Shown piece by piece: positions 44,393-63,172 of a DNA stretch of 64,000 nt; the first letter of the stretch is position 1; every line of letters begins with the position of its first letter. The stretch lies in the IMG/VR virus record IMGVR_UViG_3300032242_003291, positions 62,001 through 126,000 of that record; one strand, 5' to 3'. The notes under the pieces were generated by a model. It was not told the origin of the DNA. It saw nothing but the letters and a program-made list of their open reading frames with translations, and did not search any database. A program made the translations under genes and the position numbers.

Positions 44393-44396
44393 AATT

Positions 44397-45113
44397 TTAT
44401 TTTCCCAAAAAATCGGTTAATTTCTTCATTAAGTCAATAGACTTATCCATTCCTGTAGATTCTTGTTTAATTCTTCTCTCTTCATCTAAGTTTTCTTCAT
44501 ATTTGTCCCTATCCTCAACGTTTGAAAATAAATAAGCTCCTGGTGTTGATGGTGATGATACTAAGTCAAAACAAATTAATTCAAAATCATCTTGTACTTC
44601 ATTTCTTTCTCCCACTTTTTTGAGAGAACCCACACCTCTTGAAGATATACCTAAAGTAACCCCTTGTCTCATCAAGTTTGCCGCTTGGTCTCCTTTAGTA
44701 GAAACAATACCTCTTTCGTGAAAACCTGGTGAAGTTAATAATTTAAGTTTACCCATTAAAATATTTTTATCCCACCATATATCAGTAATAATATGAGATA
44801 CTCTATCTAAGTCTATTAAAGAGGATTCAGGATGATTTAATTCGGATGTTGATAATCCTTTGGCAATTGCCTTTTTATAGTTATCGGCTTCTCTTTTTAA
44901 TATTTGTTCGGGATAAAATCTACCATTTCTGTTTGGTGTATTATATTTTTGAAGAACCGCATAAAATTCGAATGGGTTTCTATAGTCCATGTTTGCCGCT
45001 TCTTTTAATATATCAGCGTTGAGTCTATCTTTTGGAGATATATAACCAGCATCCATTTCAACTAAAATACCGTGACCAACTTCGCTAGCCTCTAAAATTC
45101 TTAAATTTTTCAT
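44397..45113 (-). CDS. Prohead protease, T4 gp21-like
   Basis: NRNGRFYP, SELNHP, LGISSRGVGS, FDLVSSPSTPGA. Confidence 0.93.
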   Translation of the reverse strand: MKNLRILEASEVGHGILVEMDAGYISPKDRLNADILKEAANMDYRNPFEFYAVLQKYNTPNRNGRFYPEQILKREADNYKKAIAKGLSTSELNHPESSLIDLDRVSHIITDIWWDKNILMGKLKLLTSPGFHERGIVSTKGDQAANLMRQGVTLGISSRGVGSLKKVGERNEVQDDFELICFDLVSSPSTPGAYLFSNVEDRDKYEENLDEERRIKQESTGMDKSIDLMKKLTDFLGK

Positions 45114-45149
45114 CTAATCTTTTATGATAAATATATGATATACCGTAGT

Positions 45150-45590
45150 TTATACAGGAATGTCTTTTTTTGAAATTGAAAAATCAAAATATTTGTTTTG
45201 TTTAATGTTATCTCTGAATATGTTTTTTACTATTTGCTTAATTGAATCTTTCAATTCATTTGACTTGAAGTCAAGTTCAGACAATGTGTATAAGTTAACT
45301 TCTAAATTGAAAAAGGATTTTTTTCCATTAGATATCCCACTTGTTCGTAAATCTAAATCAACAATACTTTGCTCTTGAAATAATTCATGATTTATTGAAT
45401 TAAAAACTGAATGTTTTATTTCTCTACTTAAATTACAAACAATCCTATTCCAATTATCTGTTTCATATTTTGGTGTTACCCATGATTGTATGTTTATATA
45501 AACAGATTTAAGGTTTTTGGAATCCACCGTTCCATAGATTGATTTGATTGGATTAAATAGATTTAACTTTACACTTTTTCCTTTTTTCAT
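45150..45590 (-). CDS. Hypothetical phage protein
   Basis: 146-aa ORF. Confidence 0.65.
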   Translation of the reverse strand: MKKGKSVKLNLFNPIKSIYGTVDSKNLKSVYINIQSWVTPKYETDNWNRIVCNLSREIKHSVFNSINHELFQEQSIVDLDLRTSGISNGKKSFFNLEVNLYTLSELDFKSNELKDSIKQIVKNIFRDNIKQNKYFDFSISKKDIPV

Positions 45591-45685
45591 TAATTTTCAT
45601 AATTGTTATGGTTTATTTATTAAAAAATAACATATATAACCATCAATGTCAAAAATTTTCACAAAAAACAAGATATTTGTAGAAT

Positions 45686-45871
45686 ATGATAATAATAGAA
45701 ATTAAAAATGGTGATAACATAGAGAGAGCACTCAAGACTCTTAAATCTAAAGTTATCAAAACAAAACAAACACAAAAATTAAATTCGAAAAAAGAATATA
45801 CAAAAAAATCTGTACTTAGAAGGGCACAGATTTTGAAGGCGAAATATATTCAAAGTAAAAAAAATAATTAG
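45686..45871 (+). CDS. rpsU: Ribosomal protein bS21 homologue
   Basis: 61 aa, basic; IEIKNGDNIERALKTLK.KV.KT....L...KEYTKKSV.RR matches the bS21 pattern; antisense to the head genes. Confidence 0.82.
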   Translation: MIIIEIKNGDNIERALKTLKSKVIKTKQTQKLNSKKEYTKKSVLRRAQILKAKYIQSKKNN

Positions 45872-46563
45872 ATTGATTCTTCTAATTTTTTAAGTTTTAA
45901 AAAATTAACTTGGTCAAACTTTTCAGATTTTAATCTATCTATAGTCTCAGAAATTTTTGTTTTCAATTCAAATTCTTTTTCGTTTTCTAAGATAGTTTGT
46001 AATTTAGTTATTGTGCCTTCTCTTAAAGTTTCAAATTTTGTTTCCAACGATTTAGAATCTTCAGAAATTAATTTGAAAAATTCTTTTTTAGACGTTTCAT
46101 CTAAGTTATCGATGTATGTTCTCAAAGTTTGATTGGCAATGTTGACCATTGATTTAATTGGTATATTAATTGACTCTTTTACAGAATTTGACTCAGTTTT
46201 TAATAAGGAAATTATATTCTTCTTAGCTTGAATTCTTTCGTGTAAATTTAATTTTCCTGAAACTAACACATCAATATCGGAATATTTGTTATTAACATTT
46301 TCCTGAATTGGCTTTGGGAGTTTGATTGATGGTAAAATTTTTCCTAAAAGATTTAAACCTTCTTCTAAAAATTCTTTGGCGTCGGATTCTGAAAGACCTT
46401 GTGGTGTACTCAATTGGTCATACAAAGCATATGCTTTAGATATAGACTTATTGTTCAATACATTTTGTTTGAACTCTCTCAAGGACTTCTTGAATTCTTT
46501 TTCGTTTGTATACGACTCAAGAAGATTTTTTTCAATTATGGATTTGATTGTGCCAAAGGTCAT
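45868..46563 (-). CDS. Hypothetical helical protein of the head module
   Basis: 231 aa; TATTTAT 14 nt upstream. Confidence 0.65.
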   Translation of the reverse strand: MTFGTIKSIIEKNLLESYTNEKEFKKSLREFKQNVLNNKSISKAYALYDQLSTPQGLSESDAKEFLEEGLNLLGKILPSIKLPKPIQENVNNKYSDIDVLVSGKLNLHERIQAKKNIISLLKTESNSVKESINIPIKSMVNIANQTLRTYIDNLDETSKKEFFKLISEDSKSLETKFETLREGTITKLQTILENEKEFELKTKISETIDRLKSEKFDQVNFLKLKKLEESI

Positions 46564-46584
46564 CTTAATATTTTTCTATAAATA

Positions 46585-48465
46585 CTATGAATTTAGTAAC
46601 TTATTCAATTCTTTTGTAATTTCTCCTAAAGAATCTTGTCCGTGACCCAAATCAATAAATTTATCACCATGAATGAAGTTATTTTCTACTAAAATACTTA
46701 AATTATCCATTCTTGATTCAGGTATTGGTGGTTCAGCTCCTGGTGGTGCTTCTGGTGGTGGAGGTCCTCCTGCTTCAGGTGCTCCTCCTGCTTCTGGTGG
46801 TGGCGGAGCTCCTCCTTCTTCACCTCCACCTGATGATGGTGGTGGTGCACCTAATTCTTCAGTTCCTCCTGGTGTAGTTGCTGCGCCAGCATTTGCTGTG
46901 GCGCCTGAAGGACTACCATAAAGTTTATCTATATTATCAAATAATCCTGTCTTAGTAATGACTGTAGGTGTTGCCTTAAGTTCTTCACCAACCGCTCTTT
47001 CAATTCTTTGTTGTTGTAAATCAAGTCTAATTTCTTCATCAGACCAATCAAATATGTGTTTCTTAGCCCAAGTAGATGAAGTTGCTTGAATACCATTTCC
47101 TGGGTCTGCAACCAAATCTTTGTACAATAATATTTTTTCTTTCCAAACATCAACTTTCAACAAGTCAGCTTGAGTAGATGGGTTTGTAAGACCCAATGTG
47201 AAGTTTGAAAGTTCATCTTCAAATCCTAATAAAAATAAATGTATGATAGCAATCTTATTAAGTTCCGCTAACATACTTTTTTGAATCCTATTAATTGTAC
47301 GAGCAAATCTAATATCTTGTAGTGCAAGATTTTTTCCATCACCAACAACTTCTTCAAATCCTAAGAATGCCTTCGGAACACGAAGTGCAGTTAATAATTT
47401 CTTCTGAATATATTCAATGTCGGCAATTTCAGATAAATTTTGAGCTCCTGGTAAAGTATCAATTGGACTTGGTGCTGCTGGGTCTCTAACAGGAACAAAG
47501 TAATCTTGGTCAACTGCCATTTGATTAAATCTCATATCTACATTACCCGTCTTGTTATCAACAATTTGTTCTCTCTTGAATTTGTTAGCAACACGTTGTA
47601 CGTATGCTTCTACATCATCATCATTCATATTTCCAACAAACACTTTGAATATTCTTCTTTCAGGTGCTCTTGATGTTCTATATATTAACATCGCATCTTC
47701 ACACAACAAAAGTTGTTTCCAAGTTCTTCTTGCCTTTTCCAACATAGAAGTACCATAAGGAAGTTTTCTATCGTCACCTAACAATCTGAAGTGAGCAATT
47801 TCCCATGATTGAAATTCCATGTTTTTGTTCTTCCAAGTAAAGTGTAATGCTTTTTTATCTTTGTCTAACTCTTGTGTAATATCTACAGATATCTTTTGAC
47901 TAACACCAACTTCATGTCTTTCAATTTCAATTGTTGGTAATTGTTGTACTCCAGTCACACCTTTTTCAGGGTCCAATTTTAAGTAAACAAAGTTATCACC
48001 GTACTTACAAGTGTTTCTTGTCCACATTGGTAAGTTGGTATTAATATCAAGTGCATTGTTAAATAAGTCAGCTAGTACACCTTTAATTCTTTTTGATTCT
48101 GAATAAATTTGTAAAATAAATCCATCTTCGTTTGTTGTTGTAGATTCTTCCGCATAGATGTCTAACGCTGCAGAAATCTCAGGAGTATACTCCATTGACT
48201 CATAATCGTATTGTGATGACAATCTTGTTGGCTCATAATAAATTGCTTGAGAATATAAATTGTTCTCAACCTTAGCCCATTGATTAGCTAAATAAAAAGT
48301 TTGTTGAGCTTGTAGTTTTTCATTTTCGTACTCTTGCTTGTTTGTAGTACGCAATAATTCCTTCTTATCAAACTTAAAAGTTGGATAATCTTGTCCTAAT
48401 AGAGAGTTTGGTCCAAAAGTTTTGGATAATCTCTGCCATACCGTCTGATTGTTTTGTTCAGCCAT
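46585..48465 (-). CDS. Portal protein, T4 gp20-like
   Basis: EISAALDIY.EE, KYGDNF, YGTSMLE.AR..WKQL.L.EDAMLIYR.SRAPERRIF, EDY-like QDYFVP, DIRFARTI.RIQ. Confidence 0.93.
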   Translation of the reverse strand: MAEQNNQTVWQRLSKTFGPNSLLGQDYPTFKFDKKELLRTTNKQEYENEKLQAQQTFYLANQWAKVENNLYSQAIYYEPTRLSSQYDYESMEYTPEISAALDIYAEESTTTNEDGFILQIYSESKRIKGVLADLFNNALDINTNLPMWTRNTCKYGDNFVYLKLDPEKGVTGVQQLPTIEIERHEVGVSQKISVDITQELDKDKKALHFTWKNKNMEFQSWEIAHFRLLGDDRKLPYGTSMLEKARRTWKQLLLCEDAMLIYRTSRAPERRIFKVFVGNMNDDDVEAYVQRVANKFKREQIVDNKTGNVDMRFNQMAVDQDYFVPVRDPAAPSPIDTLPGAQNLSEIADIEYIQKKLLTALRVPKAFLGFEEVVGDGKNLALQDIRFARTINRIQKSMLAELNKIAIIHLFLLGFEDELSNFTLGLTNPSTQADLLKVDVWKEKILLYKDLVADPGNGIQATSSTWAKKHIFDWSDEEIRLDLQQQRIERAVGEELKATPTVITKTGLFDNIDKLYGSPSGATANAGAATTPGGTEELGAPPPSSGGGEEGGAPPPPEAGGAPEAGGPPPPEAPPGAEPPIPESRMDNLSILVENNFIHGDKFIDLGHGQDSLGEITKELNKLLNS

Positions 48466-48502
48466 ATTACAATTTTACTTATTACCTTGATAATATAAAT
48501 AG

Positions 48503-50260
48503 TTATTTAGCACCAAATAACCATCCATACTTCATGTAATCGGCTTTGCTCGGCCCTTCGTTTAATTGGCTTTGTCTACCCATTTGAGGTATATATGGGT
48601 TAAAGTATTCCGAAGTATTTTTGTTCTCGTTGGATATAGATGTCCAAGAGTTTAACATAGCCTTAGTATGATTAACGACTTTCTGTAAAGATTGGAATGA
48701 TTTTTCAGCAACGTAAATTGCCATTGAAATACCCATAATACAGTCATCATGGTGGCCCTTCTGATGGTCAGGTCTACCATTAATGTATACAAATGTATTC
48801 ATTTCATTATACAATCTATGAGAATAAATTTTGAAATCATGTCTTGCGGCTTCTTCTAACGATGCAATAATTTGAACTCTTTTGCTGTTGAAATTAATAC
48901 CAGGAATTTTTTCATTTATTTTAGGGTCCCATTTCCATTTGTTGGTTGTATCAACATTATCAACATACATTCCACCTTGGTATCCCAACTCCTGCATTTT
49001 TCTTGCTGTTGCAACTCCCATACCACCAGTTAAATCGACAACACAATATGCATTATACATTGTTCCCCACTTGTAAGCAATCTCGGCAGTTACATCTGGT
49101 GGTACTTTTCCGACGTATTCAAGGACTTGCTCTCTTGTATCAAAGTCAATTATCTCAATAGAACTAAAGTCTTCGGAATCCCCTCTTGATACGTCCACAC
49201 CCATTACATATTTGTGTCCCTGTTCTGCTTCTTTAAAAATCCACAAAGCACTACCCATCATTTTTGCAATAGGTTCTCTTAAATGGTTTTTGGCTATGTT
49301 TTGCATTAATTCAGAATCAAATACGTTATCACCCGAACCTAAGAAATTACATTCTAACTCCTGAGCCACCTTTCTCCTATCAAACTTCAATTTCTTAACC
49401 ATACCTTCAAACCAAGCTGAACATGGTTTATATCCTTTAGAGATATAATCGGTTGTAATTGAGTGGTCTCTTTCATAAGGATTATCAACAGATAAATCCA
49501 CAACAACATCCTGTGGATAGTCTTCTCTGTTTAATAAAAAATGAACCAAGTCATTTGTTTTAACCATATACAAATCTTTTGTATATCTTGGGTCACGGAA
49601 CCAAAACATTTCAGATATTTTGAAATCATTCATGTTTCTTAATGACTGGTCATAAATTTCATAATAGATTGGGTCATATCCGTTTGGTGTGGATACAACG
49701 ATAACCTTACCACCCGTAGATAGTGAGGCCATACAGGCAGACCAGAAATCTCCGTCTGCCTCAATGAACGCCGCCTCATCAAAGATAAGAATAGTCGGAG
49801 TATAACCTCTCAACGCATCCTTTGATGTCGCAACCGCCTTAACTTCGCAGTCATTTGTAAGTTTGAAATGTCTTTGTGAATTCTTTTCTTGTGAAAATCC
49901 AACGCCAACCCATGCTGGCCATTGTTCTGTAAAGTTTCTAATCTTGTTAGCCATCTCCACAGATGTATCTAACTTATTGGCAATGATTAGAATTTTTTCA
50001 GGCTTTTGTTTTTTAGCAAACACAAGTTTTTTAGAAGCCCATGCAGCAGTTACTGTTGATACACCTGCCTGACGATACTTCAATGCAATATTTTCATTAT
50101 ATGCATCGTAATCTTCTATTAGGCTAACTTGGTCGGGGAATAAATCTAACGGAACATATTTTGATACCGTATTATCGTAAGTCTGTAAATAAGTACGAAG
50201 TGCATATGGTGTGTTTCTCATGCACTTCGTAACTTCTATAATTAATTGTTCTTTAGTCAT
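48503..50260 (-). CDS. Terminase large subunit, T4 gp17-like
   Basis: LKYRQAGVST, IFDEAAF, VVSTPNG, GVDVSRGDSEDFS, HDDCIM. Confidence 0.93.
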   Translation of the reverse strand: MTKEQLIIEVTKCMRNTPYALRTYLQTYDNTVSKYVPLDLFPDQVSLIEDYDAYNENIALKYRQAGVSTVTAAWASKKLVFAKKQKPEKILIIANKLDTSVEMANKIRNFTEQWPAWVGVGFSQEKNSQRHFKLTNDCEVKAVATSKDALRGYTPTILIFDEAAFIEADGDFWSACMASLSTGGKVIVVSTPNGYDPIYYEIYDQSLRNMNDFKISEMFWFRDPRYTKDLYMVKTNDLVHFLLNREDYPQDVVVDLSVDNPYERDHSITTDYISKGYKPCSAWFEGMVKKLKFDRRKVAQELECNFLGSGDNVFDSELMQNIAKNHLREPIAKMMGSALWIFKEAEQGHKYVMGVDVSRGDSEDFSSIEIIDFDTREQVLEYVGKVPPDVTAEIAYKWGTMYNAYCVVDLTGGMGVATARKMQELGYQGGMYVDNVDTTNKWKWDPKINEKIPGINFNSKRVQIIASLEEAARHDFKIYSHRLYNEMNTFVYINGRPDHQKGHHDDCIMGISMAIYVAEKSFQSLQKVVNHTKAMLNSWTSISNENKNTSEYFNPYIPQMGRQSQLNEGPSKADYMKYGWLFGAK

Positions 50261-54483: not shown

Positions 54484-55215
54484 TTAGTCCTCTATTTTTC
54501 TTTCAACAGATAACTCTTTATCCAAAGTTTTATTTAATGTATCAAATAAGTTTTGAATGTGTCCCGACCTCCTCAAGAATTTGAATACCAAATTTTCGTA
54601 AGAAAGTTCCCCATCTTTTTCAAGTCCAGAGTTTCTATATTCTTTTAACTTGTCTTTAAGGGTGTCTAATTTAGAATTATCTTCATCTTCAACTGCTGCG
54701 TCAATTTTGTCTGTCCAAGTTTTGATTTTGTGTTTTAGTACTTCTTGGTCTACTTGATTTTTCATCTTATTTGGAACATTAATCCATTCGTCATTCATAA
54801 TTGAAAAAACACCAGAACTATAATGAGCCTCCTCGGTATCTTGAGCATAAAGTTCAACATCGTATCCAAAGATTTTGATGTCATGTTTATCGTTGAAAAG
54901 TTGTTTTTTTAGGTTGAATAATTCTTTGTATAAATCAGATTCTTCATCATATTGACTTAAATCAACATGAACGTGTAAATCAAAATCTGAAAATTCGGAC
55001 CAATTAAAATTAGCCAAAGAACCTGTGAGCACAATATCCTCAACGAAAATTTCGTCACCTAAGTAGTCAATAAATTTTTCAGCAATTTTAAGAAGTGCTT
55101 TTCTAACCTTTGTGACCATTTTAGACTTTTTAGGGTCTTTAGGGTTTTCCCAAATTTTAGGATTCAAAGTACTCTTTACAGAAAAACTATCGAGGATTTT
55201 TTGAAAATTACTCAT
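54484..55215 (-). CDS. Pol-beta superfamily nucleotidyltransferase
   Basis: IVLTGSLANFNW..FSDFDLH (GS...DxD) and VELYAQD. Confidence 0.75.
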   Translation of the reverse strand: MSNFQKILDSFSVKSTLNPKIWENPKDPKKSKMVTKVRKALLKIAEKFIDYLGDEIFVEDIVLTGSLANFNWSEFSDFDLHVHVDLSQYDEESDLYKELFNLKKQLFNDKHDIKIFGYDVELYAQDTEEAHYSSGVFSIMNDEWINVPNKMKNQVDQEVLKHKIKTWTDKIDAAVEDEDNSKLDTLKDKLKEYRNSGLEKDGELSYENLVFKFLRRSGHIQNLFDTLNKTLDKELSVERKIED

Positions 55216-55236: not shown

Positions 55237-55479
55237 TTATAGTTTTTTGTATTTGTATTTTTTAGATATATCTGTGGTAAAAAATTTACCTTGAGATTCA
55301 GCTTTTCTGAATTTTGTGTACTCTTGGTGAGGTACTTCTTCGTACTGGTATCTATGACCGTTAGCAAATTCTACAATCATTAATTTTGTTTCAGTATCGT
55401 ATTCTGATTTTTTAAGATTTGAAGATTTAATTTCATTCAGAATCTTCGTCCCCTTGATTTCTTCTTTTGTAATCGACAT
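55237..55479 (-). CDS. KTSC domain protein
   Basis: SSNL..SEYD.ETK.MIVEF..G..Y.Y..VP...Y..F..A.S.GKFF...I. Confidence 0.85.
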   Translation of the reverse strand: MSITKEEIKGTKILNEIKSSNLKKSEYDTETKLMIVEFANGHRYQYEEVPHQEYTKFRKAESQGKFFTTDISKKYKYKKL

Positions 55480-55841: not shown

Positions 55842-56246
55842 TTAAAGTAGACTTACTCTTTTCTTCTCTTGTTTTTTGAAGTTAGGAATGAACACGGTTA
55901 GAAGACCGTCTTCTATTGTTGCCTCAATGGACTCGGGATTCAAATCAGTACCAATTGTAAATTTCTCTTCAATTGATTTTGTTTTTTCTTCCCCATTTAA
56001 TTTGTACGTTCTACTTCCTTGGATATGAATGATACCATTCTCCACTTCAACTTTCAAAGTTGTTTTATTAAAACCTGGCGCTTCAAAGAAAAGATATGCA
56101 CCGTCTTTTGTGTAATTAATCTCGTGAGCGTCAGCACCTTGAGTTGTTATTTTAGTTGTTCTATATGTTGGTCTTTCGTAATTTAACATTTCCAACACCT
56201 TTTCAAAATCATAACTAGGTCCTCCGAATAAACTTCTGTAAATCAT
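55842..56246 (-). CDS. Small heat-shock protein (Hsp20/alpha-crystallin)
   Basis: FEAPGFNK..LKVEVENG.IHIQG...F.I...LNPESIEAT.EDGLLTVFIP, C-terminal RVSLL. Confidence 0.85.
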   Translation of the reverse strand: MIYRSLFGGPSYDFEKVLEMLNYERPTYRTTKITTQGADAHEINYTKDGAYLFFEAPGFNKTTLKVEVENGIIHIQGSRTYKLNGEEKTKSIEEKFTIGTDLNPESIEATIEDGLLTVFIPNFKKQEKKRVSLL

Positions 56247-56290
56247 AATAGTTTTGTTTGTTTTAATTTTATTTATTTATCTTTACATAA

Positions 56291-56428
56291 TCAAGTTATG
56301 TGCCACCACGAATATACTGAAAAAATTTCAGTTCTTTTATTACACATACGACAAAATGTCAGTTAAAAAAAATATTACCGACAATTTGACAAATTATTTG
56401 GCAGTGTCCAATTTTTGATACACCTTTG
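56291..56428. promoter_or_regulatory. Divergent control region for hsp20 and clpC: sigma54-like box, three phased palindromes, Bacteroidota-type promoter
   Basis: TGGCAC-N5-TTGA (minus, 56291-56305); ACTGAAA-N3-TTTCAGT 56316-56332; GACA-N3-TGTCA 56350-56361; GACA-N3-TGACA 56380-56391; TTTG(56397)-N20-CACCTTTG(56421). Confidence 0.5.
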
Positions 56429-56444
56429 ATAAAATTATTTAATT

Positions 56445-58457
56445 ATGAACGATTTAATGGACGACGACGACAAAATGAGTAAAAAACAAAAACAATCCTC
56501 TGACAGCAGTACACCTGTGTTGGATAACTTTAGTCGAGACCTAAACAAATTGGCCGCTGATGGCAAATTAGACCCTGTCATTGGGCGTGACAGAGAGATT
56601 TTGAGAATCGCTCAGATTCTATCTCGTAGAAAAAAGAATAACCCAATTATTATTGGTGAACCTGGTTGTGGTAAAACAGCACTTGTTGAAGGTTTGGCTA
56701 TCAAAATTGTAAATGGTGATTGTCCTCGCAACTTAGTTGATAAACGAATCGTTAACCTTGACTTAACTTCAGTGGTTGCTGGTACAAAGTACCGTGGTCA
56801 ATTTGAAGAAAGAATGAAGGTTATTATTGAAGAACTTCAAGCAAACCCAAATATCATCGTATTCATTGATGAAATACATACCTTGGTTGGCTCAGGTAAT
56901 TCAGCTGGTTCTATGGATGGTTCAAACATATTCAAACCCGCATTATCTCGCGGTGAACTTCAATGTATTGGTGCAACTACATTGGATGAATTCAGAAAAA
57001 ATATTGAAAAAGACGGAGCACTCGAACGTAGATTCCAAAAGGTAATGGTTGAGCCATCATCAGTGGAGGAAACAATTCAAATCTTGAAGAATGTTCGTGA
57101 CAAATACGAAACATTCCATAAGGTAACTTACACAGATGAAATCATCGAGACTTGTGTTAAATTGGCTGACCGTTATATCACGGACCGTGAGTTTCCTGAT
57201 AAAGCGTTTGATATCTTGGATGAAGTTGGAGCTCGTATGCAAACCGAACTTAAGATTCCTGAATCAATCGAATTATTGAAGAAAGCTGCCGCTGATATCA
57301 AACAACAAAAAACTGATGTTGTTAAGAAACAAAACTATGAGCAAGCCGCTCAATTAAGAGACAAGGAGAAAAAATTGTTGGCAAAGTTAGAATCTGAAAA
57401 CTCAAAGTTCGAAGAAGCTATGTTGAAAGACAAACAAAAAATTGCTCTTGATGATGTTTATGATGTTGTATCTAATATGACAAAAATCCCTGTGAACAAA
57501 ATGAGTGTAGATGATGCAAAAGCATTAATCAACTTAGATAAAGAATTGATTGGTAAAGTTATTGGTCAAGACTCAGCTGTCGTTAAGATTGCAAAATCAA
57601 TTAAGAGAAACAGATTGGGTATCAAAGACCCTAACCGTCCAATCGGTTCATTCATTTTCTTAGGCTCAACAGGTGTAGGTAAGACTCACTTGGCTAAACA
57701 ATTGGCTAAAGAGATGTTTGGTTCTGAAGATTCACTTATCCGTGTGGATATGTCTGAATACCAAGAGAAACATACTGTATCTAAATTGGTGGGAGCTCCT
57801 CCAGGTTATGTTGGATATGAAGAAGGTGGTCAATTAACTGAAAAGGTAAAGAACAAACCATACTCAGTAATCTTATTTGATGAGGTTGAAAAAGCTCACA
57901 AAGATGTGTTTACAGTATTACTTCAAATCTTGGATGATGGTCACGCAACAGATAGTTTAGGTAGAAAGATTAACTTCAAGAATACTTTAATCATCTTGAC
58001 GTCAAATTTAGGTGTGAAAAAATTACAAGACTTTGGCACAGGTATTGGTTTCTCTAATAACTCTTACGGAAACGAAGAGGCTAAGAAACAAGTACTGATG
58101 AAAGAAATGAAGAATTTCTTTTCACCTGAGTTCTTAAACCGTATTGATGACACTATTGTCTTCAACTCTTTGACTCCTGAGGATATCAAGAAAATCACTG
58201 AAATTGAATTGAAGAAGTTAACAGCTCGTTTGTCTGAGATGAAATACAACATCAGTTATGATGAGACATTAGTTGACTACTTAGCTAAGATTGGTTTCGA
58301 CGAATTATACGGAGCTAGACCACTTAAAAGAGCAATCCAAGACAAAGTTGAGGACTTGTTATCTGAAGAAGTTCTAACAGGTAAAATGATTGAAGGTAAG
58401 AATTACATTATCAAAGTGGATAATGAAGAAGTTAAGGTTACCAAGAAAGGTAGATAA
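56445..58457 (+). CDS. clpC: ClpC-type AAA+ unfoldase lacking the N-terminal Clp-repeat domain
   Basis: Two AAA modules (GEPGCGKT/FIDEIH and GSTGVGKT/LFDEVEK); pore loops KYRG and GYVG; UVR-type middle domain (QNYEQAAQLRDKE); IGF ClpP-docking loop. Confidence 0.88.
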   Translation: MNDLMDDDDKMSKKQKQSSDSSTPVLDNFSRDLNKLAADGKLDPVIGRDREILRIAQILSRRKKNNPIIIGEPGCGKTALVEGLAIKIVNGDCPRNLVDKRIVNLDLTSVVAGTKYRGQFEERMKVIIEELQANPNIIVFIDEIHTLVGSGNSAGSMDGSNIFKPALSRGELQCIGATTLDEFRKNIEKDGALERRFQKVMVEPSSVEETIQILKNVRDKYETFHKVTYTDEIIETCVKLADRYITDREFPDKAFDILDEVGARMQTELKIPESIELLKKAAADIKQQKTDVVKKQNYEQAAQLRDKEKKLLAKLESENSKFEEAMLKDKQKIALDDVYDVVSNMTKIPVNKMSVDDAKALINLDKELIGKVIGQDSAVVKIAKSIKRNRLGIKDPNRPIGSFIFLGSTGVGKTHLAKQLAKEMFGSEDSLIRVDMSEYQEKHTVSKLVGAPPGYVGYEEGGQLTEKVKNKPYSVILFDEVEKAHKDVFTVLLQILDDGHATDSLGRKINFKNTLIILTSNLGVKKLQDFGTGIGFSNNSYGNEEAKKQVLMKEMKNFFSPEFLNRIDDTIVFNSLTPEDIKKITEIELKKLTARLSEMKYNISYDETLVDYLAKIGFDELYGARPLKRAIQDKVEDLLSEEVLTGKMIEGKNYIIKVDNEEVKVTKKGR

Positions 58458-58463
58458 TTAATG

Positions 58464-58491
58464 AACCCTCACAGAAATGTGGGGGTTTTTT
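58464..58491 (+). terminator. Intrinsic terminator after clpC (identical copy at 63195)
   Basis: AACCCTCACA-GAAA-TGTGGGGGTT-TTTT. Confidence 0.85.
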
Positions 58492-58509
58492 ATATCAATA
58501 TAATGCATA

Positions 58510-58536
58510 AAAAAAATCGGGTGAAAACACCCGATT
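58510..58536 (-). terminator. Intrinsic terminator for the peptidase gene
   Basis: AATCGGGTG-AAAA-CACCCGATT, with a U tract on the minus strand. Confidence 0.75.
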
Positions 58537-58558
58537 ATAAAAAGATATATAAGTTTAA

Positions 58559-59398
58559 TTAAAATAAGAATCTAGCAAACTCTTTTGGTTGTGATTCTTT
58601 GTAGTGAAGTTTGTATCCCAAACTTTCTATCATTTTTCTACCCATATCAATTCCGTTAAAAACATCCTCAACAACGACATATTCATTTTTTGTGTGGTAG
58701 TTATAATATCCGATTGAAAAATTGATACAAGAAAAATTAAATTTAGTTCTTAAAGCATAAACATCAGTGTATGGATGTACCATATATTGCATGTCCTCAT
58801 TATTCATTCCTTCAGTTAATATTTGGTCCACCTTTTCAAAAAACTCTGAATTTCTGTCGAATAGAACTTGACCAAAACATTTTTCAGTAATCATCCAGTT
58901 TTCAGGTGCATCAAATTGAATTCCATATCCAACATTATTGAAGAATTCTTCTTTAGCTTTCTTTGAACCGTGACATCCTGTTTCCTCAGAAACAAAAAAT
59001 GCGGCCTTAAGATAAGGTAATTCTTTCAAAAGGGTTAAACACGCAAATACTCCACACTTATCATCACCACCAATCCCTGTTGGATTTCCTAAGTCGTTAT
59101 ACGCTTTATATGATAGTTTTAATTCACCTTGTGTATTAGGTAATTGTTCTTCTTGGATGTTGATTGTATCAATATCATGAACTGTGTCCGTATGCGCAAT
59201 TACGCAAGGGAAATAGAAATCAGGAGGAATCAATACAGACTCTTGTTTTGTTGCATACACATTTTTGTATTCATCAACAAAAAATTCAATATTATTTTCT
59301 TTAAGCCATTGAACTAAGTAGACGACCATAAGGTCTTCTTTATAAGTTTTGGTTGGGACACTTAAAACGTCCTTTAATAGTTGTAAATTTTTTTCCAT
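58559..59398 (-). CDS. M28/M20-clan zinc peptidase
   Basis: IAHTDTV, GIGGDDKCG, FVSEETGCHGS, QFDAP, GYYNYHTKNE. Confidence 0.85.
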   Translation of the reverse strand: MEKNLQLLKDVLSVPTKTYKEDLMVVYLVQWLKENNIEFFVDEYKNVYATKQESVLIPPDFYFPCVIAHTDTVHDIDTINIQEEQLPNTQGELKLSYKAYNDLGNPTGIGGDDKCGVFACLTLLKELPYLKAAFFVSEETGCHGSKKAKEEFFNNVGYGIQFDAPENWMITEKCFGQVLFDRNSEFFEKVDQILTEGMNNEDMQYMVHPYTDVYALRTKFNFSCINFSIGYYNYHTKNEYVVVEDVFNGIDMGRKMIESLGYKLHYKESQPKEFARFLF

Positions 59399-59402
59399 AC
59401 CA

Positions 59403-59434
59403 CAAAGGTAGGTAAATTATTCGTCATCTCCAAA
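59403..59434 (-). promoter_or_regulatory. Bacteroidota housekeeping-sigma promoter (-33/-7)
   Basis: TTTG-N20-TACCTTTG on the minus strand, ending 4 nt before the peptidase ATG. Confidence 0.72.
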
Positions 59435-61231
59435 TAAATCAAACAATTCAGGTTGATATAACAATTTTAAAAATGCTTCTTCGGATAGTGAAAAATCTTT
59501 GGACCCTTTAAAACTAGAAGTAATTCTAACATTTACTTTCATTTTGTCTCTGTCAAACCCTAAAACTTTAAATTTTATATTTTTGTCTTTTGGTAATTCA
59601 TACCAAGTATTAATTTTATATTTAGATTCTATCCTTTTCCTAAATTCAATGAAATTTTTCAATTCACCTTCTTCATTTTCAATTTTGTCAATAATTTTGT
59701 CAAAATATGATTCCGCGGTTCTATTAAATGATACGGAATCAAAATTGTCAGAATCTTGGAATTCATAAGAATTTTCTGCCCATCCTCCTATATCTTTACC
59801 ATGTTGTTCGATTATTTGATTAAATAAAGATATTACATCTGTTTTATGTATATCTAATCTTGTGGACCACATCAACAAATTAGCAACAGTTGTAGAAATA
59901 TAATCATATTTTCTATGGATTTTAAATCCAACAGATTCGAGTAAATTATTCAAATCTTTGTCAATTTGTACTCTTGCTGTTGCATTCATTTCATTTTCTT
60001 TTTCCGAATGATAATCACCAATAATCCAATCCATTTCATTTTCAAATGTGTCCAATAATGCTTCTGCAAGTTGTTGTCTATAACCCTCGTCATCCAACTT
60101 ATACTCTATGTTAGGTAAAAGTGCGGATGCAATTTCTTTTAATTTTTCTTTATTTTCATCATTTAATTCATAAAAAATAATATATCCGTTTTTGAAATCA
60201 TCTTCGATGGTATATCTATCCATAAATTCATACCCACTATAGTGACTTTCAATTGCATTTAAAAACCAAATATCATCCTCATGTAAATCTAATGAATTAA
60301 AAAATTTATCGTCGTTGTCAAAGTCAATTATTATAATACTTTGACCTAAGGGTTCTCTTTCATCTACCGCGTATATTCCATCATCAGAATTTGCTAAACC
60401 TGTGGAAGAAACCTTTTTTCTAATGAACCCTCTCAACGACTTTGAAAAATCACTTACTCCGAGTAATTCATCTATCAAATCTATTTGTTGTGGAAATTCT
60501 TTTCTCAATTCATCAGGACCAACTAATACATCCGATGAGTTATAAACTTCTTTTCTTTTTTCTTCCGTATCTACGAACAACGCGAGTTTATTTCCGTCAT
60601 TTTTATTAATGAAATAATATAATTCCCCTTTTTCTGCATATTGTCTAAAATAATGAGATGTCTGTTTGTTTGTAGTGCACCATTTAGTATTTGCACCATA
60701 ATAACAAGAGGCGGCATATGTCTTTGGCATAACAACCAAAACATTTTCATCTTCATACAATTTTTCAGCTTGAGATTTCAATTCTCTCTCAAGTTCTTTA
60801 TTTGTTTTTCTACTATCAACAACTTCCATCAATTCTTCTAAAAAGGCTGGGTTTGTATATTGGTTGATATCTTTTGGATTGTCAGCAAGATTATTGATAT
60901 TATCGAATACTCCATGTCTTGCTCTATACTTTGTTTCAGTTTTCCAAATGTCATCTGAAGTTATCTTATCAACATTTTGGTGAAACCAAGGAATAATCGT
61001 ATAAAAAACATCAGAAACTGCTGTTCTTTGGTCTAAATTCAATCCACCTTCAGGACCACTTAATTGAGGTATGATTTTATTTAATTGATTGGCAAGATAA
61101 TCCACATACTTGTACCTTGTTGGGTCAATATTCAGTACTTGGTCAATAAAATTAGTGTCGTATTTAAACTTTTGTTTAAGTTTTTTAGCAACTTCCTCTT
61201 TTTTCCCTTCTATTAGTATCTTTTTGGACAT
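59417..61231 (-). CDS. Large protein with PcfJ-like domain
   Basis: KLYEDENVLVV.PKTY.ASCYYGANTKWCTT...YF..Y...GELYYFI; TATTTAT-N5-ATG. Confidence 0.6.
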   Translation of the reverse strand: MSKKILIEGKKEEVAKKLKQKFKYDTNFIDQVLNIDPTRYKYVDYLANQLNKIIPQLSGPEGGLNLDQRTAVSDVFYTIIPWFHQNVDKITSDDIWKTETKYRARHGVFDNINNLADNPKDINQYTNPAFLEELMEVVDSRKTNKELERELKSQAEKLYEDENVLVVMPKTYAASCYYGANTKWCTTNKQTSHYFRQYAEKGELYYFINKNDGNKLALFVDTEEKRKEVYNSSDVLVGPDELRKEFPQQIDLIDELLGVSDFSKSLRGFIRKKVSSTGLANSDDGIYAVDEREPLGQSIIIIDFDNDDKFFNSLDLHEDDIWFLNAIESHYSGYEFMDRYTIEDDFKNGYIIFYELNDENKEKLKEIASALLPNIEYKLDDEGYRQQLAEALLDTFENEMDWIIGDYHSEKENEMNATARVQIDKDLNNLLESVGFKIHRKYDYISTTVANLLMWSTRLDIHKTDVISLFNQIIEQHGKDIGGWAENSYEFQDSDNFDSVSFNRTAESYFDKIIDKIENEEGELKNFIEFRKRIESKYKINTWYELPKDKNIKFKVLGFDRDKMKVNVRITSSFKGSKDFSLSEEAFLKLLYQPELFDLFGDDE

Positions 61232-61252
61232 TAAACATAAATATAATTTTTG

Positions 61253-61283
61253 TTTGGAATTTCAATATTTATCATTATCTTTG
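61253..61283 (+). promoter_or_regulatory. Bacteroidota-type promoter with embedded TATTTAT motif, driving tmRNA
   Basis: TTTG(61253)-N19-TATCTTTG(61276). The core AATATTTATCATTATCTTTGT recurs at about 62334-62354. Confidence 0.75.
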
Positions 61284-61303
61284 TGATAGTTCTTTAAAAT
61301 ATT

Positions 61304-61700
61304 GGGGATGCAAGGTATTGACGGCCATTCGTATGGTAAATGGGCACGTAGTCAGAATTCATCTATGACTTAAATCCACGGTGAAAAAACTCAAATGGCA
61401 ATACTTTTGCTAAAATGGCTACTTTAGGTTTAACTAGAGAAGCTGTTGTTGTTGCTGCTTAATAGTAGAGAACAACGTTCGGGTCGGTTAGGACATATAA
61501 CCTAGGAACAGAAGTCCGTAATACGGGTCACAGGTCAGAGCTCGTTTAAAATAATTCTGAGACCAGGTAATTTGTGAGTTTGGTTCCCACATATATCAAA
61601 CTTAATATTTCGTAACATTGAGAAACAATGTTGTACTAAACGTGTAGTCCATTTATGGTTCAGTGGTTCGGACGCGGCTTCGATGCCGCCATCTCCACCA
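61304..61700 (+). ncRNA. ssrA: tmRNA (397 nt)
   Basis: 5' GGGGATG pairs with 3' CATCTCC-A-CCA, including the G3:U alanine identity pair; T-arm GCGGC/GCCGC; internal ORF ending ...GCT GCT TAA TAG TAG. Confidence 0.93.
61397..61462 (+). other. tmRNA tag reading frame, (A)GNTFAKMATLGLTREAVVVAA*
   Basis: In-frame translation ending in AA and triple stop. The resume codon GGC is inferred from position after the A-rich AAACTCAAAT segment. Confidence 0.7.
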
Positions 61701-61705: not shown

Positions 61706-61734
61706 AAAAAAGGTTCCTATTTGGAACCTTTTTT
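61706..61734. terminator. Bidirectional terminator between tmRNA and the HNH gene
   Basis: AAAAAAGGTTCC-TATTT-GGAACCTTTTTT; contains the HNH TAG stop. Confidence 0.85.
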
Positions 61735-62262
61735 ATTTTCAATAATTAATTCTATCAATTCATTAACCATATCATCAGACATATCATTTTTCATCCAATT
61801 AATGGCTCTTGACACCCATCTAATATTTCCTTTAATATAACCTTTAGAACTATCTATTCTATCCAAAGATGCTGTATAAATTGGGTTTTTGTTAATCTTA
61901 CTATAAGTTGATAGTATAAGATTTACTCCACTAAATTCGCAAATACCGTTTTGTTTTTCCCATTTTTCTTTCAAATCATCAATTGTTATATCAATAACTT
62001 GATTTCTGGTTTTAATATTCCTAAAATGATATTTGAATTTAGTATATTCATCACCTTTTCGTTTATACCCAAATTTTGATATATCAATTCTTTTATCTCC
62101 AAAATTTTTAATATTGTGTTTCCCGACACAAGTTCTAGTACAAAAATTAGGTCTATTTAATTTTTCATTTCTTCTTATTTCTGTTAAAGGTTTTTCAAAT
62201 TCAATACCGCAGTTTTTACAAACACATTTACCCATTTTGTATTTTTTTGTTTTGATTCCCAT
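61717..62262 (-). CDS. HNH-like free-standing endonuclease with N-terminal Zn finger
   Basis: CKNC...FCTRTC; CEFSG; ASLDRIDSSKGYIKGNIRWVS..IN.MK; TATTTAT-N4-ATG. Confidence 0.75.
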   Translation of the reverse strand: MGIKTKKYKMGKCVCKNCGIEFEKPLTEIRRNEKLNRPNFCTRTCVGKHNIKNFGDKRIDISKFGYKRKGDEYTKFKYHFRNIKTRNQVIDITIDDLKEKWEKQNGICEFSGVNLILSTYSKINKNPIYTASLDRIDSSKGYIKGNIRWVSRAINWMKNDMSDDMVNELIELIIENKKGSK

Positions 62263-62321: not shown

Positions 62322-62353
62322 TTTGGTTAATTTAATATTTATCATTATCTTTG
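62322..62353 (+). promoter_or_regulatory. Bacteroidota-type promoter with embedded TATTTAT
   Basis: TTTG(62322)-N20-TATCTTTG(62346). Confidence 0.75.
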
Positions 62354-62635: not shown

Positions 62636-63172
62636 ATGAAAAAACAATTTAAATTCATTTTAGGAGCTTTGGCATTAATGTTCATTTCGCTTACCTCAAA
62701 TGCACAATTTAAAAAAACAGAAAAGTTCTTAGAAGGAACAGTTTCTTATTCAAAAGCTACAGGTGCTGTAAGACAGTACAGTATTAACCCTTCATTCGGT
62801 TATTTCTTAACTAATCGTTTTGCAGTAGGTGTTAATGGTGGAATTGGTGAAGATGCTTCAACAAAGAAAACAGTATTAGGTGCTTTCGGAAGATGTTACA
62901 TAATGAACATTGGAGATAAATTAAACATTTTCTCTCAATTAAGTGTTTCAAGTAACAAAGCAGAAATTGGTAAAACTAAAACAACAACAACTAACTCAAA
63001 TTTAGGTATTGGTGCAAATTATTTCGTATCTAAGAAAATAGCACTTACTACAACGTTAGCTGGTTTAGTTGATTATAGTGAAGTTCATTCCAAATCTACA
63101 TTCTCAGTAGGATTCAACGGAATTAACAACCCATTAACTACAGCTCAATTTGGTGTTTTATACAAATTTTAA
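62636..63172 (+). CDS. Outer-membrane beta-barrel protein (8-strand, Bacteroidota-type)
   Basis: Signal peptide ending SNA-Q; alternating amphipathic strands (FGYFLTNRFAVG, GANYFVSKKIAL); terminal GVLYKF BAM signal. Confidence 0.8.
   Translation: MKKQFKFILGALALMFISLTSNAQFKKTEKFLEGTVSYSKATGAVRQYSINPSFGYFLTNRFAVGVNGGIGEDASTKKTVLGAFGRCYIMNIGDKLNIFSQLSVSSNKAEIGKTKTTTTNSNLGIGANYFVSKKIALTTTLAGLVDYSEVHSKSTFSVGFNGINNPLTTAQFGVLYKF

What the first reader, a model, noticed from the sequence alone, without database searches (positions are those of the whole stretch)
55842..61700. Phage proteostasis and ribosome-rescue module: Hsp20 + ClpC + aminopeptidase-type peptidase + tmRNA within 6 kb
Seen: a holdase, an unfoldase with a ClpP-docking IGF loop, an M28/M20 peptidase and an ssrA gene, mostly under host-type promoters. 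Established: tmRNA tags stalled chains, Clp ATPases deliver tagged proteins to ClpP, and peptidases recycle the products. Inference: the phage brings a near-complete tag-unfold-recycle pipeline, borrowing host SmpB and ClpP (neither seen in this window). With its own tag sequence it could be semi-orthogonal and redirect host ClpP.
Basis: partly seen in the sequence, partly recalled or inferred. Interest (0 to 1): 0.74.

Follow-up and report, generated by a model that had tools for sequence, protein, structure and literature searches.

The report
Phage tmRNA plus N-less ClpC protease set
A 317-kb freshwater jumbo phage of Bacteroidota carries its own ribosome-rescue RNA (tmRNA) with an unusual, conserved 21-residue tag beside a ClpC unfoldase that has lost its regulatory N-domain, a peptidase and a small heat-shock protein, and it encodes its own ClpP elsewhere; the gene set is real and conserved, but whether the parts work as one pipeline is untested.

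Summary
All four features are confirmed at the stated coordinates: Hsp20, a ClpC-type double-AAA+ unfoldase with an IGF loop, a clan-MH (M20/M42-like) metallopeptidase and a full-length tmRNA.

Three points change the picture.
- The phage does not borrow ClpP. Its genome encodes a canonical ClpP about 17 kb past the window. SmpB is absent from the genome, though two relatives carry it.
- The ClpC lacks the whole N-terminal domain in all 74 complete phage homologues (664-719 aa, against 839-906 aa in 78 Bacteroidota ClpCs). Published work on S. aureus ClpC shows that removing this domain opens an activated ClpC to SsrA-tagged substrates.
- The tag is 21 aa (GNTFAKMATLGLTREAVVVAA) against the 9-aa GENNYALAA of Flavobacteriales. 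Its length and a K-M-x-x-L-G-L-x-R-E core hold across 45 distinct family tags.

The order ClpC, peptidase, orf604, tmRNA is fixed in every related contig with enough flank. Hsp20 is the variable member and alternates, never together, with a double-UVR-motif protein. RNA-library contigs from lakes and estuaries cover the tmRNA but not its neighbours. Functional coupling of tag and ClpCP is plausible but unshown: the synteny comes from one lineage, and an unrelated 642-kb phage has an N-less ClpC without a tmRNA.

The parts
55842..56246 (-). Small heat-shock protein (Hsp20, alpha-crystallin domain), 134 aa, transcribed divergently from ClpC. This is the variable member of the set.
   Evidence: PF00011 E 5.8e-11 and phrog_432. 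Present in 19 of 78 and 25 of 80 related loci. The same slot holds a double-UVR protein in 40 loci, and never both.
56445..58457 (+). ClpC-type Hsp100 unfoldase without an N-terminal domain, 670 aa. It comprises D1, a short M-domain with a UVR motif, and D2 with an IGF ClpP-docking loop (residues 534-536).
   Evidence: Walker A/B motifs, the KYRG and GYVG pore loops, sensor 2 and [IV]GF are conserved in 75 phage sequences. All 74 complete phage homologues are 664-719 aa, against 839-906 aa for 78 Bacteroidota ClpCs. The aromatic residue equivalent to S. aureus F436 is kept (Y298).
58463..58536 (.). Two facing intrinsic-terminator-like hairpins between the convergent ClpC and peptidase genes.
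   Evidence: 58463-58488 (+) and 58536-58515 (-).
58559..59398 (-). Clan-MH (M20/M42-like) di-metal exopeptidase, 279 aa. It is the catalytic domain only, with no lid or dimerisation domain.
   Evidence: The ligand set H69, D112, E138-E139, D163, H235 is invariant in 30 homologues. AF2 pLDDT is 93. The top folds are PepT, PepD and TET aminopeptidases.
59403..59434 (-). Bacteroidota-type promoter motif (TTTG-N20-TAccTTTG) directly upstream of the peptidase start codon.
   Evidence: consensus match only.
59417..61231 (-). Conserved protein of unknown function, 604 aa, lying 18 nt upstream of the peptidase on the same strand. The N-terminal part is variable (PcfJ-like hint). The C-terminal ~340 aa are the family core.
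   Evidence: AF2 pLDDT is 90.5, but no informative fold match was found.
61253..61283 (+). Bacteroidota-type promoter (TTTG-N19-TATCTTTG), 20 nt upstream of the mature tmRNA 5' end.
   Evidence: TAnnTTTG lies upstream of 45 of 54 family tmRNAs. The identical 18-mer recurs at 62336-62353.
61304..61700 (+). tmRNA (ssrA), 397 nt, one-piece, with CCA encoded.
   Evidence: RF00023, 80.6 bits. The acceptor stem is 100% canonical with compensatory changes in 54 distinct relatives, and G3:U70 and discriminator A are invariant. RNA-library contigs cover it.
61397..61462 (+). Tag reading frame: GGC resume codon, 21 codons (GNTFAKMATLGLTREAVVVAA), then UAA followed by UAG.
   Evidence: ARAGORN predicts the same tag in relatives, and L034 is identical.
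61706..61735 (.). Bidirectional terminator hairpin (A-run, GGTTCC-TATTT-GGAACC, T-run) after the tmRNA.
   Evidence: Read from the sequence. Similar hairpins follow the tmRNA in relatives.
61717..62262 (-). HNH homing-type endonuclease, 181 aa. It is sporadic next to the tmRNA in relatives and is probably a mobile passenger, not a module member.
   Evidence: phrog_3322 and phrog_1035. Present in only about 10 of 80 loci.

Best explanation
The locus is part of a phage-encoded ribosome-rescue and proteolysis set in a T4-like, 317-kb jumbo phage of freshwater Bacteroidota.

Shown:
- The tmRNA is a real, selected and transcribed RNA. It carries the alanine identity pair and a conserved 21-codon tag frame.
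- The ClpC is an intact double-ring unfoldase with a ClpP-docking loop and no N-domain.
- The genome has its own catalytically complete ClpP.
- The peptidase has a complete di-metal site.

Inferred mechanism:
- During infection the tmRNA is charged by host AlaRS and delivered by host SmpB to stalled ribosomes. This frees the ribosomes and adds the 21-aa tag to the nascent chain.
- The N-less ClpC has lost the domain that in S. aureus ClpC acts as a selectivity filter against SsrA substrates. It threads tagged and other unfolded chains into phage ClpP.
- The protein in the divergent upstream slot (Hsp20 here, a double-UVR protein in relatives) acts as a ClpC cofactor or activator.
- The exopeptidase trims the released peptides to amino acids.
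- The long, internally conserved tag suggests recognition by something other than the host ClpX C-terminal LAA rule.
For: tmRNA:
- One search gives a full Rfam match.
- One search shows covariation and an invariant G3:U70 pair.
- Searches show 45 distinct tags, all 21-22 aa. G11-L12 is invariant and L12 is encoded by four different codons. ARAGORN independently gives the same tags.
- One search shows RNA-library contigs at about 96% identity over the tmRNA, with zero depth over orf604.
- One search finds no recent host copy in 401 Bacteroidota genomes.

ClpC and ClpP:
- Searches cover ClpC integrity, the IGF loop and N-domain loss.
- Searches cover the phage's own ClpP. It has the Ser/His/Asp triad and is not the prohead protease, which is the separate S77 enzyme.
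- Searches show no ClpX and no ClpS.

Peptidase and synteny:
- Searches cover the peptidase.
- Searches show invariant adjacency.
- Searches show the Hsp20/UVR alternation in one slot.

Literature:
- PMC12583610: the ClpC N-domain is a selectivity filter, and an activated delta-N ClpC gains GFP-SsrA degradation.
- PMC6274998: Mtb ClpC1 unfolds an SsrA substrate without its N-domain.
Against: - All the synteny comes from one phage lineage with generally collinear genomes. Adjacency may therefore reflect descent and not function.
- A 642-kb phage has an N-less ClpC among sugar-modification genes and no tmRNA.
- One complete relative has the ClpC and tmRNA but no ClpP.
- In S. aureus, delta-N ClpC alone is inactive unless M-domain contacts are also broken (PMC12583610). 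The phage keeps the contact aromatic (Y298).
- ClpP lies 17 kb from the module.
- pN/pS over the tag is only 0.58.
- The last two tag residues vary (VAA, VVA, TVA, VTI, VKA). This argues neither for nor against a Clp degron.
- Docking modelling gave no answer.
- No evidence links the peptidase to ClpP products.
Confidence: 0.45

Rival explanations
1. The genes are independent auxiliary genes that merely sit together. The tmRNA only restores ribosome capacity, for example when host or phage nucleases create non-stop mRNAs or when tRNA- or mRNA-cleaving defences act, and its tagged products go to host ClpXP or other host proteases. The N-less ClpC-ClpP has another job, such as degrading host or defence proteins or quality control of the adjacent T4-like head assembly. 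The peptidase is unrelated.
For: - N-less ClpC occurs without a tmRNA in the 642-kb phage LR756502.1.
- A complete relative lacks ClpP.
- ClpP is 17 kb away.
- The module abuts the terminase, portal, prohead protease and capsid genes.
- Most tags end in hydrophobic-x-Ala, as host degrons do.
- Huge phages in general carry tmRNA and SmpB as translation helpers (PMC7162821).
Against: - The tag is twice the host length, with a conserved internal core that ribosome release alone would not need.
- Loss of the ClpC N-domain is the change shown experimentally to admit SsrA substrates (PMC12583610).
- Adjacency is retained down to 68% ClpC identity, while the flanking HNH and Hsp20 genes come and go.
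Confidence: 0.35
2. The phage tmRNA is a competitor or decoy of the host tmRNA. By out-competing host ssrA for SmpB it replaces the host degron with a long tag that host ClpXP reads poorly. Truncated phage proteins are then spared, or marked for a phage-specific fate such as binding by orf604 or by the Hsp20/UVR slot protein, and are not degraded.
For: - The penultimate tag residue is free to vary, including E and K, and some tags end in TI or VS.
- The strongest conservation is internal (K6, G11, L12, R14, E15).
- The phage lacks its own SmpB, so it must compete for the host protein.
- A conserved unknown protein sits next to the tmRNA.
Against: - 36 of 39 21-aa tags end in Ala after hydrophobic residues, a pattern typical of degradation tags.
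- An unfoldase with a ClpP loop and a ClpP are both encoded.
- No binding evidence exists for orf604.
Confidence: 0.12
3. The ssrA sequence is a remnant or attachment-site copy picked up by integration into a host tmRNA gene, and has no function in the phage.
For: Many temperate elements integrate into ssrA and carry its 3' part (general knowledge).
Against: - The gene is full length, with its own promoter and terminator.
- It shows compensatory changes across 54 distinct copies.
- It resembles none of 401 Bacteroidota tmRNAs beyond the 3' 35-50 nt.
- It lies in a T4-like phage.
- It is found in RNA libraries.
Confidence: 0.02

Closest known systems
Bacterial trans-translation with ClpXP/ClpAP degradation (tmRNA-SmpB, ssrA tag)
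   Same: One-piece tmRNA with a G3:U70 acceptor, a T-arm, a resume codon in the host-like context (AAAT-GGC), a tag ending in hydrophobic residues plus Ala, and a double stop. An AAA+ unfoldase with an IGF-type loop and a ClpP are also present.
   Different: - The system is carried by a virus, and this genome has no SmpB.
- The tag is 21 aa, against 9 aa in Flavobacteriales, and has a conserved internal core.
- The only phage unfoldase is ClpC-type, not ClpX or ClpA.
- No SspB-like adaptor is recognisable.
ClpC of Firmicutes, Actinobacteria and Bacteroidota (class I Hsp100 with MecA/McsB control)
   Same: - 55-60% identity to Bacteroidota ClpC and E 1e-227 to S. aureus ClpC.
- D1 and D2 are both present, with a short UVR-type M-domain and the F436-equivalent aromatic residue.
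- The VGF/IGF loop is present.
   Different: - The whole N-terminal domain, which binds adaptors and phospho-arginine and locks the resting state, is absent in all phage copies.
- No MecA, McsA or McsB is seen.
- A small Hsp20 or double-UVR protein occupies the adjacent slot.
Mesoplasma/Mycoplasma long ssrA tag read by Lon (specificity switch; cited from memory, Gur and Sauer 2008; discussed in PMC8403727 and PMC10695633)
   Same: A much longer tag than usual, with determinants spread along it, associated with a protease other than ClpXP.
   Different: - In that case the host lacks ClpXP and uses Lon.
- Here the candidate reader is an N-less ClpC-ClpP brought by a phage.
- Nothing has been shown biochemically here.
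tmRNA, SmpB and chaperone genes of huge and jumbo phages (Al-Shayeb et al. 2020, PMC7162821; 'moraphages', PMC12619734)
   Same: - Huge phages are known to carry tmRNA and SmpB.
- Moraphages are 200-307-kb freshwater T4-like phages of predicted Bacteroidota hosts. Their core genes include a Clp ATPase, a 'putative peptidase' and a 'Lys-tRNA ligase' (KTSC) gene, and some have HSP20. That is the same gene neighbourhood as here.
   Different: - Neither paper describes the tmRNA of this lineage. ARAGORN, used by the huge-phage study for tmRNAs, finds only 13 of 55 here.
- Neither describes its 21-aa tag, the loss of the ClpC N-domain, the phage ClpP or the fixed ClpC-peptidase-tmRNA adjacency.
TET/M42 and PepT (M20B) peptidases acting downstream of ATP-dependent proteases
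   Same: Clan-MH fold and a complete co-catalytic metal site. These peptidases have a known role in trimming the oligopeptides released by proteasome- or Clp-type machines.
   Different: - It lacks the PDZ-like or lid domain that builds TET dodecamers or PepT dimers.
- Its specificity and oligomeric state are unknown.
- The link to ClpP products is inference only.

Membership tests
tmRNA (Rfam RF00023) | Covariance-model score above the curated threshold over the whole model | tested here: met
   80.6 bits against a gathering score of 47, model positions 1-374.
tmRNA (Rfam RF00023) | tRNA-Ala-like acceptor with a G3:U70 pair, discriminator A and a T-arm, kept by compensatory changes | tested here: met
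   In 54 distinct family members the 7 acceptor pairs are 100% canonical. Pairs 4-7 covary, and G3:U and the discriminator A are invariant.
tmRNA (Rfam RF00023) | Internal tag reading frame with a resume codon and an in-frame stop | tested here: met
   Window 61397-61462. The frame is kept at 21-22 codons in 45 distinct tags. ARAGORN gives the same frame in 9 relatives.
tmRNA (Rfam RF00023) | Works with SmpB, EF-Tu and AlaRS on stalled ribosomes | not testable with these tools
   No SmpB in this genome. Two complete relatives carry SmpB.
ClpC (class I Hsp100 with ClpP coupling) | Two AAA+ modules with intact Walker A/B motifs, pore loops and sensor 2 | tested here: met
ClpC (class I Hsp100 with ClpP coupling) | Short coiled-coil M-domain with a UVR motif, not the long ClpB M-domain | tested here: met
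   UVR motif at residues 282-311. It aligns without a gap to the S. aureus ClpC M-domain.
ClpC (class I Hsp100 with ClpP coupling) | ClpP-docking [IVL]-G-F loop in D2 | tested here: met
   IGF at residues 534-536. [IV]GF is present in 75 of 75 phage copies.
ClpC (class I Hsp100 with ClpP coupling) | N-terminal Clp_N repeat domain (binds adaptors and pArg) | tested here: not met
   No Clp_N hit. The alignment starts at S. aureus residue 146. Phage copies are 664-719 aa, against 839-906 aa for cellular ones.
ClpC (class I Hsp100 with ClpP coupling) | Physical docking to ClpP and ATP-dependent proteolysis | tested here: inconclusive
   The complex prediction scored 0.00, with the verdict 'no answer'.
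ClpP (peptidase S14) | Full-length CLP_protease domain with a Ser-His-Asp triad, and not a prohead protease | tested here: met
   - PF00574, 189 bits.
- The GMAASMG, MLHQ and RD motifs were read.
- It is 45-48% identical end to end to Bacteroidota ClpP.
- A separate S77 prohead protease is present in the window.
Small heat-shock protein (Hsp20/alpha-crystallin) | Alpha-crystallin domain above the Pfam threshold | tested here: met
   PF00011, 42.8 bits against a cut-off of 20.8.
Clan MH metallopeptidase (M20/M28/M42) | Co-catalytic metal ligands His, Asp (bridging), Glu-Glu, Asp/Glu and His on the MH fold | tested here: met
   H69, D112, E138-E139, D163 and H235 are invariant. The fold matches PepT, PepD and TET at E 1e-10 to 1e-13.
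Clan MH metallopeptidase (M20/M28/M42) | Lid or dimerisation domain (M20), or PDZ-like domain (M42) | tested here: not met
   At 279 aa only a short beta-hairpin fills that place. It is therefore not assignable to M20 or M42 proper. The sequence scores sit near the thresholds.

The most novel reading that the evidence does not exclude
The phage runs a private degradation channel. A 21-aa tag evolved from a short Bacteroidota tag by extension, and its conserved internal core is read specifically by the N-less ClpC. The exchangeable Hsp20 or double-UVR protein in the adjacent slot helps or unlocks the ClpC through its M-domain. Together with phage ClpP, this would let the phage decide the fate of every rescued nascent chain independently of host ClpXP. 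It would be a viral counterpart of the Mycoplasma tag-to-Lon specificity switch.
Probability: 0.25. Interest if true: 0.8.

Novelty: new variant of a known kind. Interest (0 to 1): 0.62.

Why it matters
- **Known parts, new combination.** Phage tmRNAs and phage Clp genes have been listed before, but not as a fixed set with an altered tag and an unfoldase stripped of its gatekeeping domain.
- **What it would show if coupled.** It would be a naturally occurring orthogonal tag-protease pair, and a case of a virus taking over translational quality control and not merely supplementing it.
- **Ecological weight.** The family is abundant in lakes, rivers and estuaries, with hundreds of contigs and its tmRNA visible in metatranscriptomes. 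The effect on Bacteroidota hosts could therefore matter ecologically.
- **A natural ClpC experiment.** Recent biochemistry shows that the ClpC N-domain filters out SsrA substrates, and this phage ClpC lacks that domain.
- **An annotation gap.** ARAGORN misses most of these tmRNAs, so phage surveys that rely on it undercount them.

Tried and rejected
- **ARAGORN on the window and genome** found no tmRNA. It detects only 13 of 55 relatives. This is a tool limitation, not absence.
- **Strict Bacteroidota promoter motif over the window** is not enriched: 5 found against 3.9 expected. The sigma-70 scan is at the shuffle level.
- **Complex prediction of ClpC D2 with two ClpP copies** scored 0.00, 'no answer'. 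It is not used as evidence either way.
- **orf604** gave a confident AF2 model but no informative match in the PDB (Foldseek), in AFDB clusters, where only uncharacterised proteins matched via the N-terminal part, or in VIA wide, where Z stayed under 7. The Atlas search gave only viral hypotheticals and a weak PcfJ hint. No SmpB-like or SspB-like assignment is possible.
- **Search for a close host tmRNA** in 401 Bacteroidota genomes matched only the universal 3' end. No host could be named from it.
- **A second retrieval through the peptidase profile**, meant to reach other phage lineages, returned the same family. It adds replication but no independent lineage.
- **The N-terminal likeness of the Hsp20 and UVR-protein families** is weak (hhalign P 0.0045, probability 8%). 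It is kept only as a hint.
- **The attachment-site remnant idea** was rejected (see rivals).
- **The idea that ClpP is the prohead protease** was rejected, because a separate S77 protease is present.


Full report
**What the window is.** The window is bases 62001-126000 of a 317,259-bp IMG/VR virus record that CheckV rates as complete. It carries T4-like head genes: the Gp23 capsid protein at 40282-42093, an S77 prohead protease at 44397-45113, the portal at 46585-48465 and the large terminase at 48503-50260. The whole genome has 20 tRNA genes. DNA of this phage is held by lake, estuary, wastewater and other aquatic metagenomes. The nearest cellular relatives of its ClpC are almost all Bacteroidota, mostly Flavobacteriales, at 55-60% identity. 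Its ClpP is 45-48% identical end to end to Bacteroidota ClpP. A Bacteroidota host is therefore well supported, but no genus can be named. The gene content resembles the 'moraphages' described in PMC12619734. Those are 200-307 kb, freshwater and T4-like, with predicted Bacteroidota hosts. Their core genes include a Clp ATPase, a 'putative peptidase' and a 'Lys-tRNA ligase' VOG, and some carry HSP20. That paper does not mention a tmRNA, and I could not test membership.

Rfam finds a full-length tmRNA at 61304-61700 (+), at 80.6 bits against a threshold of 47. ARAGORN misses it. Hsp20 is at 55842-56246 (-), with PF00011 at E 5.8e-11. The 670-aa Clp ATPase at 56445-58457 (+) has two AAA+ modules, a UVR-type short M-domain and the D2-small domain. 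The 279-aa peptidase at 58559-59398 (-) scores weakly to M20 and M42 but strongly to phrog_4191. It lies 18 nt upstream of the peptidase on the same strand.

**The tmRNA.**
- *Structure.* In 54 distinct tmRNAs from related contigs, all seven acceptor pairs are canonical. Pairs 4-7 change by compensatory substitutions. G1-C, G2-C, the G3:U alanine identity pair and the discriminator A are invariant. CCA is encoded in 30 of 54.
- *Transcription signals.* A Bacteroidota-type promoter (TTTG-N19-TATCTTTG, 61253-61283) lies 20 nt before the mature 5' end. TAnnTTTG is found upstream in 45 of 54 relatives. A hairpin with a T-run follows the gene.
- *Tag.* The Rfam alignment places the resume codon on GGC at 61397. 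The frame reads GNTFAKMATLGLTREAVVVAA, then UAA and UAG. Forty-five distinct tags in the family all have 21 or 22 codons and no internal stop. G11 and L12 are invariant, and L12 is encoded by four different codons. G1, N2, K6 and A21 are nearly invariant. pN/pS is 0.58, which is modest because the RNA itself is also constrained.
- *Independent check of the tag.* ARAGORN, where it detects a relative, gives the same 21-22-aa tag in 9 cases. In 3 cases it gives a shorter internal start, and in 1 case an unrelated frame at a different position. Conservation of the first 12 codons and the host-like AAAT-GGC context both favour the long tag.
- *Comparison with hosts.* Flavobacteriales genomes that hold the nearest ClpCs have the 9-aa tag GENNYALAA. 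A Sediminibacterium genome reads GNTQYAMAA by eye. The phage tag looks like a short Bacteroidota tag extended by 12 codons. That is an inference.
- *Origin.* None of 401 Bacteroidota genomes has a tmRNA resembling the phage one beyond the universal 3' 35-50 nt. It is therefore neither a recent capture nor an attachment-site fragment.
- *Expression.* In four metatranscriptome runs from estuaries and lakes, assembled contigs cover 61332-61650. Examples are a 254-nt contig with 11 differences and a 111-nt contig with 3. orf604 has no coverage and the peptidase almost none. The runs were chosen for holding tmRNA words, so depths cannot be ranked. The silent neighbours nevertheless argue against DNA carry-over.

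**The unfoldase.** The best solved relative is S. aureus ClpC (E 1e-227), aligned only from its residue 146. All 74 complete phage homologues are 664-719 aa, while all 78 nearest Bacteroidota ClpCs are 839-906 aa. Loss of the N-domain is therefore a fixed trait of the phage lineage. The Walker A/B motifs, the KYRG and GYVG pore loops, sensor 2 and the [IV]-G-F ClpP-docking loop are fully conserved. So is the aromatic residue equivalent to S. aureus F436, which makes the M-domain head-to-head contact (Y298 here). The genome has no other AAA_2 protein, so no ClpX, and no ClpS.

Published biochemistry bears directly on this.
- In S. aureus ClpC the N-domain stabilises the resting state and acts as a selectivity filter.
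- An activated ClpC gains the ability to degrade GFP-SsrA once the N-domain is deleted.
- Delta-N ClpC alone stays inactive unless the M-domain contacts are also broken (all three points from PMC12583610).
- M. tuberculosis ClpC1 unfolds an SsrA substrate without needing its N-domain (PMC6274998).

**ClpP and SmpB.** The genome encodes a 226-aa ClpP at G000:143091-143771 (PF00574, 189 bits). It has the Ser, His and Asp motifs, sits beside a carbamoyltransferase-like gene and is distinct from the S77 prohead protease. 'Borrowing host ClpP' is therefore wrong for this phage. ClpP is present in four of five related large contigs but absent from one complete 321-kb relative. SmpB is absent here but present in two complete relatives. 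The genome also has one J-domain protein and no DnaK.

**The peptidase.** Thirty homologues share invariant H69, D71, D112, E138, E139, D163 and H235, the co-catalytic metal set of clan MH. The AF2 model (pLDDT 93) matches PepT, PepD and TET/M42 aminopeptidases at E 1e-10 to 1e-13. It lacks their lid or PDZ-like domain. It is most likely an active exopeptidase. Its place downstream of ClpP is inference.

**orf604.** Its C-terminal ~340 aa are the conserved core and the N-terminal part varies in length. The AF2 model is confident (pLDDT 90.5), but no search gave a functional lead.

**Conservation of the arrangement.** Eighty related contigs were found through ClpC (68-92% identity, more than 595 hits). 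They share the order orf422, nucleotidyltransferase, KTSC protein, [orf115], [slot], ClpC, peptidase, orf604, tmRNA wherever the contig is long enough. In a second set found through the peptidase, 50 of 50 loci with enough flank have both ClpC and the tmRNA.

The slot directly upstream of ClpC varies.
- It holds Hsp20 in 19 loci.
- It holds a 123-144-aa protein with two UVR motifs (PF02151, E 1e-15) in 40 loci.
- It never holds both, and neither was detected in 21 loci.

The UVR motif is the same motif as in the ClpC M-domain. That makes the slot a candidate cofactor position, but this is a hypothesis.

**Limits on the coupling claim.** All the synteny evidence comes from one lineage. The 642-kb phage LR756502.1 has an N-less ClpC (707 aa) among glycosyltransferase and aminotransferase genes and no tmRNA. 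N-domain loss is therefore not tied to a tmRNA outside this family. The docking model gave no answer.

**Verdict.** Hsp20 is optional, the promoter claim is only partly true, and the tag-to-ClpC link remains an inference. Huge phages are already known to carry tmRNA and SmpB (PMC7162821). The fixed association with an N-less ClpC, a peptidase and an extended conserved tag appears undescribed in the literature searched. I rate it a new variant of a known kind.

Noticed in passing
Relatives L012:9455-9823 (-), L015:9312-9743 (-), L018:478-873 (-); the same slot as window 55842-56246: In 40 related loci the gene divergent from ClpC is not Hsp20. It is a 123-144-aa protein with two UvrB/UvrC motifs, the motif of the ClpC M-domain. 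It is mutually exclusive with Hsp20, and the N-termini of the two families look faintly alike (hhalign P 0.0045). It may be a ClpC regulator.
   Followed up: partly
L029:12871-13087, L043:15130-15346, L083:15113-15340, L085:10641-10865: In four relatives the T-loop of the tmRNA gene is interrupted by a group I intron (RF00028, 72-98 bits).
   Followed up: partly
G000:C1:143091-143771 (outside the window; L004:1366-2046): The phage has its own canonical ClpP next to a carbamoyltransferase-like gene. ClpP is present in 4 of 5 related large contigs, and SmpB in 2 of 3 complete relatives but not here.
   Followed up: yes
window 55237-55479 (-) and 54484-55215 (-): A KTSC-domain protein (PF13619, E 3.5e-18) and a 243-aa Pol-beta-type nucleotidyltransferase (phrog_36119) are conserved just upstream of the module in all relatives. 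About half of the family tmRNAs do not encode CCA. The role of the nucleotidyltransferase is unknown.
   Followed up: no
window 61266-61283 and 62336-62353: The identical 18-mer TATTTATCATTATCTTTG, within a TTTG-N19/20-TAnnTTTG motif, precedes both the tmRNA and the next plus-strand genes. It is a likely shared phage promoter of Bacteroidota type.
   Followed up: partly
window 61717-62262 (-): An HNH homing-type endonuclease abuts the tmRNA terminator. It is present in only about 10 of 80 relatives, so it is probably mobile.
   Followed up: partly
window 40282-50260 (-): A T4-like head module (Gp23 capsid, S77 prohead protease, Gp20 portal, large terminase) lies a few kb from the proteostasis genes.
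   Followed up: partly
L085:11887-12296 (-) and L179:14007-14413 (+): GOLLD RNA (RF02032, 275-330 bits) occurs in one relative about 1.2 kb from its tmRNA, and in the 642-kb phage LR756502.1 next to a tRNA.
   Followed up: no
window 61304-61700 and 55 relatives: ARAGORN detects only 13 of 55 tmRNAs of this family, and not the one in the window. Phage surveys that rely on it will miss them.
   Followed up: yes
window 62636-63172 (+): A 178-aa ORF has a weak outer-membrane beta-barrel match (PF13505, E 1.7e-4, below the cut-off). That is unusual for a phage gene.
   Followed up: no
G000:C1:269069-269248 (-): A J-domain protein (PF00226, 88 bits, in a 314-aa ORF) is present without a phage DnaK.
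   Followed up: no
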